In this document: positions 2,599-58,896 of the stretch, piece after piece
Numbering within the stretch: position 1 is the first letter of the stretch
Layout of the letters: each line of letters begins with the position of its first letter
NCBI RefSeq assembly: GCF_022045235.1
Contig: NW_027266308.1
Coordinates: 22,320,001-22,384,000 of the forward strand
Length of the DNA stretch: 64,000 bases
Direction of reading: 5' to 3'
From: Haliotis cracherodii
Lineage: Eukaryota
The notes under the pieces: generated by a model
Database searches by the model: none
What the model saw: only the letters and a program-made list of their open reading frames with translations
What the model was told of the DNA's origin: nothing
Translations under genes and position numbers: made by a program

Positions 2599-5500
2599 CT
2601 ACTGCTGCTCCTCGTCAGAGATATCCTGGTCATCCCGCCCTTGTACACACAGGTTGTCCTTGGGGGGCACCACTCTCGACCGAGTCTTGAACACAAACAC
2701 ACTGAAAATGAATGTGAATAAAACCATATCAAAAGAAATAAACAATCTCTTCAAGACCATAGATCAGTCATGGTCTGAGCGCATTTGAGCGGTTGTTAAT
2801 TGGAAAGTTCGCTTTGCAAATGCTTAATTTAATCTAATTTGATTTAATTCCCTGGAACTGTACTATTTTGGATTGAACTGAATCAACGTTCTTTACCAAA
2901 CAGTTTTATAATGTATTAAAGGGGGCCAAGCGCGAGTGTGTTCCCCCTCATTTGATTTATGTCGTTTGACACAGTGTTCGACACTGGCCCGCTGGTCCGA
3001 GTCTAGTATATTTTCCAAGGACCATGACAATTATATAAACGCTGGTTCGGTGGTCAAGTGTTATTCAAGATAACTATGAAAGTAATCTTAAGTATATTAA
3101 GTTTGTATGACTTTTGAAATCGGCGATAGATCGACTCTAAAATCTTAGCAAAACCAGCAGTTCAGTGGCTTCCTTCTTGACTGGTTTCTAATTCTAACTA
3201 CACCCGCTCACTTGTTGCATGGATATGGTAAGGTATCTGCGATTTAAAACCTGAAAAATTTTGGTCACTATTTTTGTGTGCTGAGCAAACTTCGAAGATG
3301 AATATCAACCAAGCAGTCAATGAGTTTTCTAATTACACACGGACACTGTCTCAGCTTCACACGGGTGCTTTTACAATACCAAGTTGCTAATCAGTTGCTT
3401 GATAAACCAGCACATGTACCGACAGACTAGATAGTAATTGAAATGACCATATTTTTACAGAAAAAAAACATTTGTTAAATTGTCGACAAAATATGATTAA
3501 AAGGAGCAAAGAGACTTTATTCATTTGCTCCGGAACTGCAGTAATCTAGACTTGCCAAGTATTATAGACTTGCATGGCTTTTATTGGATATATTTGTTTC
3601 AGGGTCTGTATGACTTATGTATCGACATCGAAAGGATATTGATGTCACTCATATCTATATTTCCAGGTCTGGATATTAAATAGTCTCCAGACTGTCGAGA
3701 ACAGGCTTTTTTAAAATTGTAAACTAACGGGCAAAAGTAAGTATACACTTGAACATGGAAACTCCAACCGCTAATATGGAAACGAAATTCTGCAAACTTA
3801 AGGTCCACAACGCAACTATGATACCCGTATCAATTATCGACTAACCATTTCTTGTTAGTTTCATTTTCAGCCACCATCAATCAAGAGTGTATACTTTCTT
3901 CAGCCCAGCGTTTTAGTTGAAGTTGAAATATATAAACGGAAGGCCAAAACACACGCCTTACTTACGTCAACAATACAATCGCCACGATCTTGGTGGCCGC
4001 CATGATGAGGAACGCTGCACCACGCATGACGCTCAACGTTGCTTCATACACGACGTTGAGTGCGGTGGACCCCACTGCATCACAGACAGCCTCCACCACA
4101 GACATACTGGTGAATATTGCACCTATAACAAGGTATCACACATATTTGTTATTAACTCGAAAGGCCATATTTCTAATGACCAACACTGAACCAGTTTCTA
4201 AGCTTGCTAGGTATACATGAAATTCAGAAACAGTTCTACGTTTGAATATTGGGCAAATATTTTTTAATTGAATTTTTTCAGATCTTGACGAACATACATA
4301 CCCTGCTCCTCGGCTGGAACCATCCGAGACAGGATAGCCCTGAGGGCTGGGGAGATGGCTGATGATGCTACCCCCACAACCGGAACTGATCCGAAAGAAA
4401 GGGCAAAATAACGGATACATGTAATCTGGCTATTAGTGGGTTGCATGCTTTTTGCATTACAGATAGGTTTTGTTTTCTTTAACTCATTTACCATGTTCCC
4501 CATGTTAGGCACTACAAGTGGGATGGGGTTGGTGGGTGGGGGATGGTGGTAACTAAGACAATAAAAATATATAGAGGGTGTTTTTTGTCAAATAACATGT
4601 TTATCTCATCTCGTGACCTGAATTTACAATATGTTTAGATTTATCTCTTAAGCCCAGGCACAGATTTGCAAGCCACAGCTCTAAAATCATGGCGAGGTCC
4701 ATTTATAATCATAATGCAAAAAACAACAATGAATTTAAGTGAATGACTTAATGAGTGAGTGAGTATTGATTTGTTGGCACTATTCCAACAATACCACGAC
4801 AGGGTACAACAGATAAGGGCTTCACATTTGGAGAATCGAACCGGCCTTCGGTGTTATAAATGAATGCTTCAACCACTAGGCTATCCCACCGTTCCTGTAC
4901 CACCTAGCACAATGACTCACCTAAATACAACATCCAGTCCACAAAAGCAAGGCCTTCTATAAGTTTAGAAGCAGCCGCAGACATGAAGCCGATGATACCA
5001 ACTACACCATCTGTGGTGCAGACGTGGAGGGCCTTGATGATGACGACACTGCTGAAGTAGTAGACACCGTCCTTCAGGGCACCGTAGAGTCCCAATCTGA
5101 CAGAATCCCAGCAAAATGGAGGGCTCAACATATACAAGTTCTCGATATTTACTGTACCATGCATGTCTATCATCTTAAACAAGAACACACTAATACAGAT
5201 CCAGAATAGGACACGGTTACCAGTGGACGTTTTCCTAAAATAAAAACCGAACACATTTTTAATGGCCGTGATGGGTGAAATACAGGTCCCGCTTCTTTTG
5301 ACCGTTTCTCGAAGCAGGGTCACCACCACAAGGAAGTCCAGAAGTGTCATGGCAGCCATTCCGACAGAAGGATACAGGTAGCCGTACATCTTTATCAAGT
5401 AACCCGTGGCTATATGCAGGGATATATCAGCTATACCCCTGGCGGCATCCACTACAGCCAGTGCTACCGTTCTCACTTTAGCTGGCGGGGTGATGTCTGC

Positions 5501-56317: not shown

Positions 56318-58896
56318 ATTCAAAAGTACGTGTATGATAAAGCGGCTTGAACAATTGACTGTAAACATTAGAACCATTATCGAATTGATAGTAATCTAAT
56401 GTTATGTAGCAATAATAACATCAATATATACCCTTCGAACAATCAAGATATCGAAATACAAGAAATTTACCTTATTGTAGGTTCTGGAATTCATAAATAT
56501 ATAAATAACATAATCTTACCTTAAAACAGAGTGAGGGCTTAAATATATAAATTACATAATCTTACCTTAAAACAGAGTGGGGGCTTAAATATATAAATTA
56601 CATAATCTTACCTTAACACAGAGTGGGGGCTGTTGAATCTCTTAAAGTCTGTAATCGTGGCAGAGCGAAGTGCCTAACACTGGACGCACGCAGTGCATGT
56701 AAATAGACTCAGCCCTTCTGTGGACCGTATTAGTGGGTTGACCTCATTGTGTAGTAGGCACCTTTTGGGTGACTACTAGTGAAGCATGGTGATTGGCAGA
56801 ACAATGGACTGTATTGCTGGCATAAAAAATATGCAGCTGACACTGATATACTTGAATATTTGTATAATAAATTCATTTCCATCAGATACACACTCAGAGA
56901 TACATATTCGCATGAATATTTATATTTCATTTGCAATGGCACGCATACACACAGATACATATTTCCTATCTTATCTTATCTGTCATTGTCATCCGATATT
57001 TTCTTCGTTTGGGACACTGCTAGACTCTTAAAAGTAGGTCTGTCAATCTGACAAGGCTGGGATGAGATTGTTTAAAGTTGCCTTATCTTTCGTAACAAAC
57101 TCAATATTTGTTGAAGCATTAGCCATGTTTTATGACAGTGTGGTGGTTTAATTCTCTATTTGAAGGCATTATGACACTGATCATTCAAATGGAGTGTACA
57201 GTTACCAATTCCCTTATTCTTCTAAGTTAAACCATTCACTATTTATCAGTAAGTGGTGGGTTGAGAGCTGTGTTCTGCTGAACTCTGAAGTTCTGCTGAA
57301 TGCTTTGATCGGATAAAGGATAATTGCTTATGATATGGCCCCATTTCTTAAAACAACACAGTTCCTGTTAATCCCATACAAGCAGCCTTCACAGTGAGAT
57401 TAAACCGATCACACCTAGGCAAATAAATTATTTACACTACTTGTGTATATATAATACAATCATGTGATACAGTGCCCATGAATACCCAACTCACGCTGTT
57501 TAATTGTTGAGCAGTAGGGTGTCTGAATCTAGTAGATATACAAAATATGTGTCTATGTGTGCAAAATGAAGTGGCACAAAGACAATTTTGTGTCAGACCA
57601 AGTAGCATAATCAATTTGGTCATGATGGTGTTAAGTGTGGTTTGAGATGCAGGATGTTATGTAGAACATGCTCTCGTAAGAGGCTGAATTTTATNNNNNN
57701 NNNNNNNNNNNNNNNNNNNNNNNNNNNNNNNNNNNNNNNNNNNNNNNNNNNNNNNNNNNNNNNNNNNNNNNNNNNNNNNNNNNNNNNNNNNNNNNNNNNN
57801 NNNNNNNNNNNNNNNNNNNNNNNNNNNNNNNTTGATTAAATACTAGTATAGAACCTTTAATTGGAATATGACCACTATAGTTATCACAATTATAGCGATA
57901 ATAGCGACTCTGACACATTTATAAACATTATACATAAACATAAATCATTATATGCAAAACCACTGGATGCATCTTTAAATACTGATCTTCAGTTATACAT
58001 TTACTAGGGGCACTGTTTGCTAGTCTGGCCCTCGTGGAGTCTGCGTGTAGTACGTTCGGCACCCCGCTCTTCAACAGCATCTACCAAGAGACAGTGACTT
58101 ACTGGAGGGGTGCTGTGTTTATCGCCATGGGGGCCATGCATGCGGCAGCCTTAGTCCTCTACCTGTGAGTATAGTGTGGCTTCATATCAAGGCCTACATG
58201 GCAGCTACATCTCACTGACATAGTACCTTGGAATTAAAACTTAATATGTTTCATCAAAACAGGCACCTCAATAGTCACCTATTTGCCGAAAATACTTTGT
58301 CATGATTGTTAGGCGGTACAAAGGATTGACACATTGCTAAATCTACTGTTGGTATTATCTACACTGCCACAAACACATGCAGATGATAAGAGGTCAGTTG
58401 GAACTATCTCTGCTCTCATGTATTATTAAAGTATCTGCGGAATCGATAGATATTCTTTTGTGGCGTGAATTATGATGATTGTTATGATGTATACATAATG
58501 TAGTACTGCATATTTGAAATGTTTGCAGTCATATTGTGACATCCTCGATTATTCAGTGTATAATAACCCCAATCTTTAATTATAAATACCCTGGATCCAT
58601 GCGATTTGAGTCTGATTAAAATGGCACGACGCTAAAGATAGTCTTCCAATTCAATGAAACTATTTTGCGAAAGTAATTATGTGGGAATTTACTGATAAGA
58701 GAAAGAAGATGGGCATGTGTTGTCAACGCTGTGGTAGCGAATGGGTCAATGGTATTTATAATATTTAATTGTACTAAGTCTTCTTATCTAATTAATTCAA
58801 ATCTTCATGTCTTCTTTCAGCATATTCGTTCCGCTATTCAGGAAGGAACAGAGACAACGTCAAGAAGTTCGGCAGATACAGACGCCAAAGTCATGA
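52720..58896 (+). CDS. G6: SLC46-family MFS transporter (divergent paralog), 5 coding exons, ~495 aa
   Basis: Exons 52720-52796 (MATDSNNEKSPLL...), 54174-55267, 55921-56004 (84 bp), 58008-58164 (157 bp), 58821-58896 (TGA); total 1488 nt, phases compatible. Motifs GTYSDFFGRK, CAYTAD, PFCW, IRGIMSK..KQGALF. The first exon is the least certain. Confidence 0.88.
53237..53403 (+). mobile_element. SINE family 1 in G6 intron 1
   Basis: Full copy; TSD CTCAGCTCCCT. Confidence 0.9.
55552..55850 (+). mobile_element. SINE family 4, degenerate, in G6 intron 2
   Basis: Homologous to 30965-31321 with deletions. Confidence 0.75.
56248..56313. repeat. (GA)n microsatellite
   Basis: Direct read. Confidence 0.95.
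56495..56631. repeat. 46-bp tandem repeat x3 in G6 intron 3
   Basis: AAATATATAAATTACATAATCTTACCTTAAAACAGAGTGGGGGCTT at 56495, 56541, 56587. Confidence 0.9.

What the first reader, a model, noticed from the sequence alone, without database searches (positions are those of the whole stretch)
2599..58896. Expanded, actively evolving SLC46 transporter array: six intact paralogs plus two pseudogenes
Seen: six complete genes in 56 kb forming at least four sequence classes (G1, G2-4, G5, G6), plus decayed copies. Established: humans have three SLC46 genes. SLC46A1 is the H+/folate symporter; SLC46A2/A3 and a Drosophila SLC46 protein deliver bacterial muropeptides to cytosolic sensors; SLC46A2 imports cGAMP; SLC46A3 exports lysosomal catabolites. 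Inference: a birth-and-death array like this is more typical of immune or xenobiotic repertoires than of a housekeeping folate carrier. It may be a diversified endolysosomal import system for microbial or dietary (algal) small molecules.
Basis: partly seen in the sequence, partly recalled or inferred. Interest (0 to 1): 0.75.

Follow-up and report, generated by a model that had tools for sequence, protein, structure and literature searches.

The report
Abalone SLC46 transporter gene array
This stretch of an abalone chromosome holds six working copies and two dead copies of a small-molecule transporter gene, and they are a slice of a family of about 45 copies whose cargo is not known.

Summary
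The window carries six intact SLC46/PCFT-like MFS transporter genes: G1-G5 on the minus strand with 4 exons each, and G6 on the plus strand with 5 exons. It also carries two decayed copies, both of the G1 class. All splice sites are GT..AG. All four N gaps lie in introns or between genes. G2-G6 match, exon by exon, RefSeq proteins named "SLC46A3-like" of Haliotis cracherodii. The G1 model is confirmed by spliced contigs of a close relative.

G2-G4 are not uncollapsed haplotypes. Exon 1 is 94-95% identical between them and intron 3 about 79-85%. Each has its own 1:1 orthologue in H. rufescens.

The duplicated unit was a gene pair, one G2-4-class gene plus one G1-class gene. It was copied three times, and the G1-class partner died in two of the three.

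The array is a slice of something much larger. The genome has 45 open exon-1 copies: 28 plus one pseudogene at 22.10-22.53 Mb on this contig, 14 at 62.2-62.4 Mb, and three singletons.

All 45 keep the MFS D-x-x-G-R switch motif. None keeps the Arg148 or Asp156 equivalents of vertebrate PCFT, and one keeps His281. Most carry an N-terminal ExxPLL dileucine signal; G2-G4 have lost its acidic residue.

Immune versus dietary cargo is untested. The scan noted SLC46 arrays in neighbouring windows of this genome before.

The parts
2599..6070 (-). G1, SLC46-like gene. CDS exons 6070-4921, 4385-4302, 4122-3966, 2701-2599 (stop included); 497 aa by phase arithmetic. An in-frame ATG also lies at 6118.
   Evidence: ORF; exons; GT..AG. 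Spliced contigs X1 record 1 and X2 record 14 lie as 2503-2701 | 3967-4120 | 4300-4385 | 4921-5080.
8174..13624 (-). G2. Exons 13624-12484, 9770-9687, 9045-8889, 8282-8174; 496 aa. The N gap 9207-9382 lies in intron 2.
   Evidence: RefSeq protein P0029 maps exon by exon; splice sites.
14034..14614 (-). psi1, a G1-class pseudogene. Residues about 262-333 of G1 are recognisable at 14034-14239 with a frameshift; most of the 5' two thirds of exon 1 is missing. 14288-14614 is homologous to the 5' end and upstream region of psi2.
   Evidence: tblastn with G1 exon 1; self-blastn.
17476..21113 (-). G3. Exons 21113-19976, 18890-18807, 18357-18201, 17569-17476; 490 aa.
   Evidence: P0027 maps at 100%; splice sites; AF2 model and Foldseek.
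25530..26425 (-). psi2, a G1-class pseudogene. Exon 1 has an internal stop, frameshifts and a deletion of about residues 112-259.
   Evidence: DNA homology to G1 at 71-76%.
27030..35389 (-). G4. Exons 35389-34249, 31644-31561, 27869-27713, 27138-27030; 496 aa. Its long introns hold transposon remains.
   Evidence: P0030 maps; splice sites; weak DDE_3 hit at 32083-32454.
39425..44043 (-). G5. Exons 44043-42930, 42242-42159, 41582-41426, 39566-39425; 498 aa.
   Evidence: P0031 maps; splice sites.
52720..58896 (+). G6. Five exons: 52720-52796 (start exon), 54174-55267, 55921-56004, 58008-58164, 58821-58896; 495 aa. The N gap 57695-57831 lies in intron 3.
   Evidence: P0016 is 100% identical over exon 2 and maps exon by exon; acceptor at 54173; splice sites.

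Best explanation
The window is the middle of a large, lineage-specific tandem expansion of SLC46-family (PCFT-like) major-facilitator transporters in an abalone.

Shown:
- Six intact genes and two dead copies.
- A two-gene unit (one G2-4-class gene plus one G1-class gene) copied three times, with loss of the G1-class partner in two units.
- Gene conversion that keeps exon 1 of G2-G4 alike.
- Purifying selection overall.
- A 12-helix PCFT-like fold.
- An invariant D-x-x-G-R conformational-switch motif, and an acidic residue at the Glu185 position in all six window genes.

Inferred:
- Each protein is a proton-coupled alternating-access carrier for small organic, probably anionic or amphipathic, molecules.
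- Most copies are sorted to endosomes or lysosomes through an N-terminal ExxPLL dileucine signal and move cargo from the lumen to the cytosol. G2-G4 have lost the acidic residue and may sit elsewhere.
- The paralogues differ in cargo, because the cavity positions that bind folate and proton in vertebrate PCFT (TMD4 and TMD7) are replaced and highly variable.

They are not folate carriers of the vertebrate kind. Which cargo they carry (microbial, dietary or endogenous) is unknown.
For: Family:
- phmmer against the PDB finds chicken PCFT at E 1e-28 as the only hit for G3. It is also the top hit for four other copies.
- The AF2 model of G3 has pLDDT 82.6 and pTM 0.81. Foldseek puts 7bc6_A first at E 3e-19, TM 0.78/0.87; the next MFS stands at 1e-9.

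Intactness: and for G1.

Expansion:
- 49 exon-1 matches in the genome.
- 39 of the 40 fetched loci have an open exon 1 covering the profile. With the 6 in the window this makes 45.

Trees:
- The window genes sit in a gastropod clade with support 99/95. Its sister holds two bivalves and one protein of unseen organism, and it lies apart from shark PCFT and cnidarian PCFT-like proteins.
- G2, G3 and G4 each pair 1:1 with an H. rufescens protein, with support 100/98, 100/98 and 99/99.

Turnover.

Selection: dN/dS 0.29-0.33 for G2-4 and 0.15-0.51 for 12 other recent pairs of the family.

Residues:
- D109, G112 and R113 equivalents 45 of 45; R148 0 of 45; D156 0 of 45; acidic residue at E185 32 of 45; H281 1 of 45.
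- The roles of these residues are taken from passages of PMC8978580.

Dileucine motif. Dileucine and tyrosine motifs as lysosomal signals, and human SLC46A3 as a lysosomal proton-coupled carrier: passages of PMC9896951.
Against: - No transport, localisation or tissue-expression data exist for any of these genes.
- The human residue numbers were mapped onto a shark PCFT by motif spacing, not by aligning the human sequence. The TMD7 alignment is uncertain for distant copies.
- No named vertebrate SLC46A2 or A3 sequence was obtained, so orthology to A3, as the RefSeq name suggests, was not tested.
- 13 of 45 copies lack an acidic residue at the Glu185 position, so proton coupling may not be universal in the family.
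- The dileucine reading rests on a sequence motif alone.
- In the three runs guessed to be RNA, contigs covered G1 but not the last exon of G2. Expression of G2-G6 was therefore not shown here.
Confidence: 0.6

Rival explanations
1. Immune repertoire. The paralogues import microbial small molecules (muropeptides, cyclic dinucleotides) from endolysosomes to cytosolic sensors, and the copy number reflects an arms race with microbes.
For: SLC46A2, SLC46A3 and Drosophila CG8046 do this (passages of review PMC11509177). There is a dileucine motif. There is birth-and-death turnover and a variable TMD7.
Against: Gene-wide dN/dS is 0.15-0.5, not above 1. The TMD7 excess among G2-4 is only 4 non-synonymous to 0 synonymous changes, too few to test. 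There are no expression data after challenge. No orthology to A2 or A3 was shown.
Confidence: 0.15
2. Dietary or xenobiotic handling. The family moves algal or endogenous amphipathic anions (sulphated sterols, bile-acid-like compounds, tetrapyrrole breakdown products, metal chelates) in the digestive gland, as detoxification families do.
For: Human SLC46A3 carries steroid conjugates and bile acids (PMC9896951). A C. elegans SLC46 member is called a lysosomal copper transporter in the start of an abstract (PMC13216265, search listing only). SLC46 expansion was linked to host-symbiont nutrient traffic in another gastropod (one passage of preprint 10.1101/2025.05.21.655246). Cavity residues are variable.
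Against: No substrate or tissue data. The argument is by analogy only.
Confidence: 0.3
3. Neutral copy-number drift. The duplicates are redundant carriers of one cargo, kept by dosage or split only by expression pattern, without change of substrate.
For: G2-4 are 93% identical and homogenised by gene conversion. Codons 136-222 hold no amino-acid difference among them. The 62-Mb cluster holds near-identical units with dS 0.008-0.03.
Against: The classes in the window differ by 60-70% of residues, yet all stay open under purifying selection. Cavity positions differ between classes.
Confidence: 0.2
4. Assembly artefact. G2-G4 are uncollapsed haplotypes or a mis-assembly around the N gaps.
For: Four N gaps lie in the region, and G2-4 are similar in exon 1.
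Against: Intron 3 is 79-85% identical, exon 2 80-93% and exon 3 81-92%, far below allelic identity. Each copy has its own orthologue in a second species' assembly. The gap flanks are collinear with paralogous units. Contigs of run X16 (kind not recorded; they run through the introns) have an even depth of 24-35 across G1 and the 3' end of G2 in a relative.
Confidence: 0.02

Closest known systems
Vertebrate proton-coupled folate transporter, SLC46A1 (chicken PCFT structure 7bc6)
   Same: 12-helix MFS fold and best structural and sequence match. The D109, G112, R113 loop motif, the Glu185-equivalent acid and the Pro373/Arg376-equivalent P-x-x-R in TMD10 are present (and for G1 exon 2).
   Different: The Arg148, Asp156, His281 and Phe282 equivalents are absent in all six window genes. 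The window genes lie in a mollusc-only clade apart from shark PCFT. There are 45 copies instead of one.
[quoted passage not shown]
   Same: RefSeq names these genes after it. A lysosomal sorting signal is likely in both.
   Different: The human protein uses a C-terminal YELL tyrosine motif (PMC9896951). The abalone genes have an N-terminal ExxPLL motif. Orthology was not tested because no named vertebrate A3 sequence was obtained.
Drosophila CG8046 and mammalian SLC46A2 muropeptide or cGAMP importers
   Same: Same family. They are the precedent for SLC46 members feeding cytosolic immune sensors (PMC11509177).
   Different: No sequence of these was compared here, and there is no functional evidence in molluscs.
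SLC46 expansion reported in Alviniconcha vent snails
   Same: A gastropod lineage with an expanded SLC46 family (one passage of preprint 10.1101/2025.05.21.655246).
   Different: It is only mentioned in a list of expanded SLC families, with no copy numbers, arrays or pseudogenes in the passage seen. Its supplementary table could not be opened.

Membership tests
Major facilitator superfamily (Pfam MFS_1) | Match to PF07690 above the gathering score | tested here: met
   Five of six exon-1 translations score 42-60 bits against a cut-off of 33.4. The partial 264-aa frame of G6 scores 31. Full-length G6 (P0016) carries PF07690 in the precomputed column.
Major facilitator superfamily (Pfam MFS_1) | Twelve transmembrane helices in two six-helix halves | tested here: met
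   The AF2 model of G3 (P0027) is helical throughout, pLDDT 82.6. It superposes on 7bc6_A over 437 columns at rmsd 3.1.
SLC46 (PCFT-like) family | Closer to PCFT than to any other solved MFS, by sequence and by fold | tested here: met
   7bc6 is the only PDB hit at E<=0.01 for G3, L038, L039 and L040, and the top hit by 30 orders of magnitude for L001. Foldseek gives E 3e-19 against 1e-9 for the next.
SLC46 (PCFT-like) family | TMD2-3 loop motif with the Asp109, Gly112 and Arg113 equivalents | tested here: met
   45 of 45 abalone copies. Residue roles come from passages of PMC8978580.
SLC46A1 (folate carrier) in the functional sense | Arg148, Asp156, His281 and Phe282 equivalents of the folate and proton site | tested here: not met
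   R148 0 of 45, D156 0 of 45, H281 1 of 45 (L040 only). None is present in the six window genes. Mapping was by motif on shark PCFT, so it is approximate.
SLC46A3 orthologue, as RefSeq names it | Groups with vertebrate SLC46A3 to the exclusion of A1 and A2 in a tree | not tested
   No named vertebrate A2 or A3 sequence was retrieved. The 20 cluster look-ups and the last homologue search named one vertebrate protein, a shark PCFT, besides invertebrate proteins (molluscs, brachiopod, annelid, cnidarians).
Tandem birth-and-death gene array | Adjacent paralogues of mixed ages plus pseudogenes derived from the same units | tested here: met
   dS ranges from 0.008 to saturation. Two pseudogenes lie in the window and one (L017) is nearby. 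The unit structure is seen.

The most novel reading that the evidence does not exclude
Abalones, and perhaps gastropods generally, have turned SLC46 into a large and variable repertoire of endolysosomal exporters. Each copy would be tuned by its TMD4 and TMD7 cavity residues to a different microbial or algal small molecule. The cytosol would thereby sample the contents of phagosomes and the digestive lumen, as a transporter-based counterpart of expanded receptor families. G2-G4, which lost the acidic residue of the dileucine signal, would be a recently redeployed subset, for example at the cell surface.
Probability: 0.15. Interest if true: 0.75.

Novelty: new member of a known kind. Interest (0 to 1): 0.45.

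Why it matters
They link lysosomal or extracellular small molecules to cytosolic metabolism and innate sensing. A genome with about 45 copies under purifying selection, with variable cavity residues and a shared sorting signal, offers a natural series of variants. Such a series could show which residues set SLC46 substrate choice and what these carriers do in invertebrates. For abalone biology (diet, symbionts, disease) it marks a large, unstudied transporter family. The genes themselves are already in RefSeq, and expansion of a solute-carrier family is a common kind of event in molluscs, so the surprise is moderate.

Tried and rejected
- Haplotype or assembly artefact: rejected.
- Gene-wide positive selection: not found. 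dN/dS is 0.15-0.51 in the 18 paralogue pairs where dS could be computed; 2 of 20 pairs were saturated.
- Local test at TMD7 among G2-4: 4 non-synonymous to 0 synonymous changes. This is suggestive but too few to count as evidence.
- Further relics in the window: none at E<=0.01 with 45 family queries, apart from one chance-level hit at 15457-15582 (E 0.001, with a stop). A weak collinear pair lies at 62167-62266 (E 0.26).
- DNA matches between the loci and the window outside the genes are short interspersed repeats.
- Naming of distant relatives: the ESM Atlas look-up of P0083 did not discriminate, giving mollusc, chordate and arthropod SLC46 clusters all at 0.99. The last homologue search showed that P0083 has cnidarian kin. 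Vertebrate A2 and A3 were therefore never obtained.
- Pfam on transposon-like ORFs in G4's introns: one weak DDE_3 hit below the cut-off among 5 ORFs.
- Some 500-nt intron-1 alignments (41-51% identity) are not homologous, and I ignored them.
- Literature: four searches found no paper on SLC46 in Haliotis. One preprint mentions an SLC46 expansion in Alviniconcha.
- Supplementary files were not opened. Table S4 of that preprint may hold copy numbers.
- Expression of G2-G6 and tissue specificity could not be tested, because read laying allows one call and the runs are contigs.
Searches used exon translations or database proteins, and G1's length rests on phase arithmetic only.
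Full report
WHAT IS THERE

The window has six long open frames of one protein family: five on the minus strand and one on the plus strand. All match Pfam MFS_1. G3's exon 1 hits a single solved structure, chicken proton-coupled folate transporter 7bc6, at E 1e-28.

A homologue search returned abalone proteins that NCBI names "solute carrier family 46 member 3-like" or "proton-coupled folate transporter-like". 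Mapping them back with tblastn showed that each gene has a large first coding exon of about 370-380 codons, followed by three short exons of 84, 157 and about 94-142 nt.

Five RefSeq proteins on a 70,628,833-bp contig map exon by exon onto G2 to G6; the short differences all lie at alignment ends that run past an exon boundary. That length equals the window's own contig. The proteins are P0029, P0027, P0030, P0031 and P0016, and P0016 is named for Haliotis cracherodii.

G6's large exon has no start codon. An 11-codon ATG frame just upstream ends in TAA, and a good acceptor sits at 54173. The true start is a 77-nt exon at 52720-52796.

G1 had no database model, so I built it from homology and reading frames. 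All junctions of all six genes are GT..AG. The exon lengths add up to whole codons and match the database protein lengths.

GAPS

The N runs at 9207-9382 and 57695-57831 lie inside G2 intron 2 and G6 intron 3. Those at 14744-14891 and 47575-47718 lie between genes.

For the first and third, the sequence on both sides is collinear with the paralogous unit. G2 8115-9157 and 9489-9776 correspond to G3 17395-18463 and 18599-18896. Likewise 14288-14614 and 15212-15521 correspond to 26350-26649 and 26658-26966. Order and orientation across these two gaps are therefore as expected. No exon is missing. The hidden letters were not sought.

G1 IS TRANSCRIBED AND SPLICED AS MODELLED, AT LEAST IN A CLOSE RELATIVE

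In three runs of coded organism A (X1, X2, X6), which are contigs whose RNA label is a guess, single contigs lie as 2503-2701 | 3967-4120 | 4300-4385 | 4921-5080 without the introns. Contigs of run X16, whose kind is not recorded, run straight through the introns.

The contigs differ from the window by about 2-4% (7 of 199 and 18 of 1028 letters), so they come from another individual or a sister species.

No contig of X1, X2 or X6 covered G2's last exon. Contigs show presence, not absence, so this says little.

PSEUDOGENES AND THE DUPLICATION UNIT

Two decayed copies exist, and both are of the G1 class. psi2 (25530-26425) has a stop, frameshifts and lacks about residues 112-259. psi1 (14034-14239) keeps only about residues 262-333, with a frameshift.

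Self-comparison shows that the repeated unit is a pair read along the minus strand: (G4, psi2), (G3, psi1), (G2, G1). A two-gene unit was therefore triplicated, and the G1-class partner survived only once. Because both pseudogenes lack the middle of exon 1, the death may predate the last duplication; this is inference.

NOT HAPLOTYPES

Between G2, G3 and G4, exon 1 is 94-95% identical, intron 3 is 79-85%, exon 2 is 80-93% and exon 3 is 81-92%.

In a careful tree of full-length database proteins, each of the three pairs 1:1 with a different H. rufescens protein, with support 100/98, 100/98 and 99/99. H. rubra and H. asinina contribute one co-orthologue each among the sequences retrieved. The triplication is therefore older than the split of the first two species.

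CONCERTED EVOLUTION

Divergence is mosaic. In exons 2-3 and intron 3, G4 is the outlier (K 0.16-0.24, against 0.08-0.16 for G2-G3). In the 300 nt upstream, G3 and G4 are closest (0.06, against about 0.2). In exon 1 all pairs are equal at 0.05-0.06, and nt 401-700 carry 0-3 differences per 100 nt. This is the pattern of gene conversion or unequal exchange centred on exon 1.

SELECTION

Nei-Gojobori dN/dS on exon 1 is 0.29-0.33 within G2-4, 0.22-0.26 against G5, and 0.15-0.51 for 12 other recent pairs of the family. Two of the 20 pairs were saturated. This is purifying selection, somewhat relaxed.

Among G2-4 there are 40 non-synonymous and 35 synonymous variable codons. Codons 136-222 hold no amino-acid change. 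Codons 293-299, aligned to PCFT's TMD7, hold 4 non-synonymous and 0 synonymous changes. That is too few for a test.

THE BIGGER PICTURE

A six-frame search of the whole genome with G6's exon gave 49 matches. I fetched 40 of them; the three weakest (E about 1e-6, at 6.35-6.37 Mb) were left out.

Of the 40, 39 have an open exon 1 spanning the family profile and one (L017) is broken. With the window's six this makes 45 open copies:
- 28 plus one pseudogene between 22.098 and 22.527 Mb of this contig, with the window in the middle;
- 14 between 62.235 and 62.420 Mb, mostly a three-gene unit repeated every 40 kb or so with dS 0.008-0.03;
- three singletons on other contigs.

These are exon-1 counts and a lower bound. 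Intactness of the other exons was not checked outside the window. Earlier notes of this scan on neighbouring windows describe the same family.

PLACE IN THE FAMILY

A search of 1.84 billion representatives with the copy closest to PCFT (L001) found 1037 clusters at E<=1e-10. Twenty were looked up for names and one unnamed clade was named through its relatives.

In a careful tree of 54 rows, the window's genes lie in a gastropod clade (33 rows, 99/95). For this tree 10 near-identical copies of the 62-Mb cluster were dropped, and the root was placed on shark PCFT plus three cnidarian proteins.

G2-5 group with L007-9, L039 and proteins of Gigantopelta, Aplysia, Batillaria and Physella (93/87). 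G1 and G6 fall in a 20-row clade made only of this genome's copies (99/97). The clade's sister holds proteins of the bivalves Pecten and Solemya and one whose organism was cut off in the listing (100/98).

The outgroup sampling was chosen by likeness to L001, so "abalone-only" may simply reflect sampling. In the word-based search with G6, all 11 hits were Haliotis. No named vertebrate SLC46A2 or A3 was obtained, so the RefSeq label "A3-like" could not be tested as orthology.

HOW IT LIKELY WORKS

The AF2 model of G3 (pLDDT 82.6) superposes on outward-open PCFT with TM 0.78/0.87, ten orders of magnitude better in E-value than any other MFS.

I took the functionally important hPCFT residues from passages of review PMC8978580. 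I mapped them by motif spacing onto a shark PCFT in an alignment with all 45 copies. The results are:
- Asp109, Gly112 and Arg113 equivalents are invariant, 45 of 45.
- The Glu185 position is acidic in 32 of 45: Glu in G2-G6 and Asp in G1.
- Arg148 and Asp156 equivalents are absent in all 45.
- His281 is kept in one copy only (L040), and that column holds 15 different residues.
- The TMD10 P-x-x-R (Pro373/Arg376) is present in all six window genes.

The machinery of alternating access, and probably proton coupling, is therefore kept, while the cavity has changed. The three cnidarian "PCFT-like" proteins also lack Arg148, Asp156 and His281. These residues may be a vertebrate specialisation, which weakens any inference from their absence beyond "not a vertebrate-type folate site".

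A NEW DETAIL

Right after the start Met, most copies carry E-x-x-P-L-L, which fits the acidic dileucine pattern [DE]xxxL[LI]. It is found in G1 (ETEPLI), G5 (EQKPLL), G6 (EKSPLL) and 25 of 39 other copies, and in several other molluscs. It is absent from shark PCFT and the three cnidarians.

G2-4 have KSVPLL, without the acidic residue. Dileucine motifs are named as lysosomal sorting signals in PMC9896951. The same paper shows that human SLC46A3 is lysosomal through a C-terminal YELL motif and is proton-driven. That the abalone motif works in the same way is inference.

LITERATURE

For cGAMP import by SLC46A2 I saw only the title of a cited paper in that review's reference list.

No paper on SLC46 in Haliotis was found in four searches. 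One preprint lists SLC46 among expanded carrier families in Alviniconcha. Supplements were closed.

VERDICT

It is plausible about endolysosomes. It is untested about immunity or algal cargo. The genes are already annotated; the array's scale, unit structure, conversion pattern, cavity variability and N-terminal motif are what this follow-up adds.

Noticed in passing
window 32083-32454 (-), 29552-30677 (+): Transposon remains lie inside G4's long introns. There is a weak DDE_3 transposase match (16.5 bits, below the cut-off) and two ORFs that look like retroelement remains by eye but have no Pfam hit. They explain why G4 spans 8.4 kb against 3.6 kb for G3.
   Followed up: partly
window 6243-6636, 3485-3681, 2500-2696: Contig depth here is thousands of times the neighbouring depth in all four runs laid, with many loose ends. 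These are high-copy interspersed repeats that flank and interrupt G1's introns.
   Followed up: no
window 62167-62266 (-): Two collinear weak matches (E 0.26, one stop) to the N-terminal region of a G6/L010-class protein. This may be a third, very decayed relic, or chance.
   Followed up: partly
G000:C45:62235347-62420943 (loci L024-L037): A second SLC46 cluster of 14 copies. It is mostly a three-gene unit repeated about every 40 kb, with dS 0.008-0.03 between units. Two of its gene types have a 100-aa N-terminal extension and lack an acidic residue at the Glu185 position.
   Followed up: partly
L040 (G000:C37:347008-348387): This singleton is the only one of the 45 copies that keeps a His at the PCFT His281 position together with Glu at the Glu185 position. 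It sits on a very long branch, and in the overview tree it joined the clade of shark and cnidarian PCFT. It is a candidate for the nearest thing to a canonical PCFT in this genome.
   Followed up: partly
window 49741-50011 and 51049-51319: A 271-bp direct repeat, 97% identical, lies between G5 and G6. Its nature is unknown.
   Followed up: no
window 61789-61892: A short-period tandem repeat that also occurs next to several other family members (L003, L009, L026, L029, L032).
   Followed up: no
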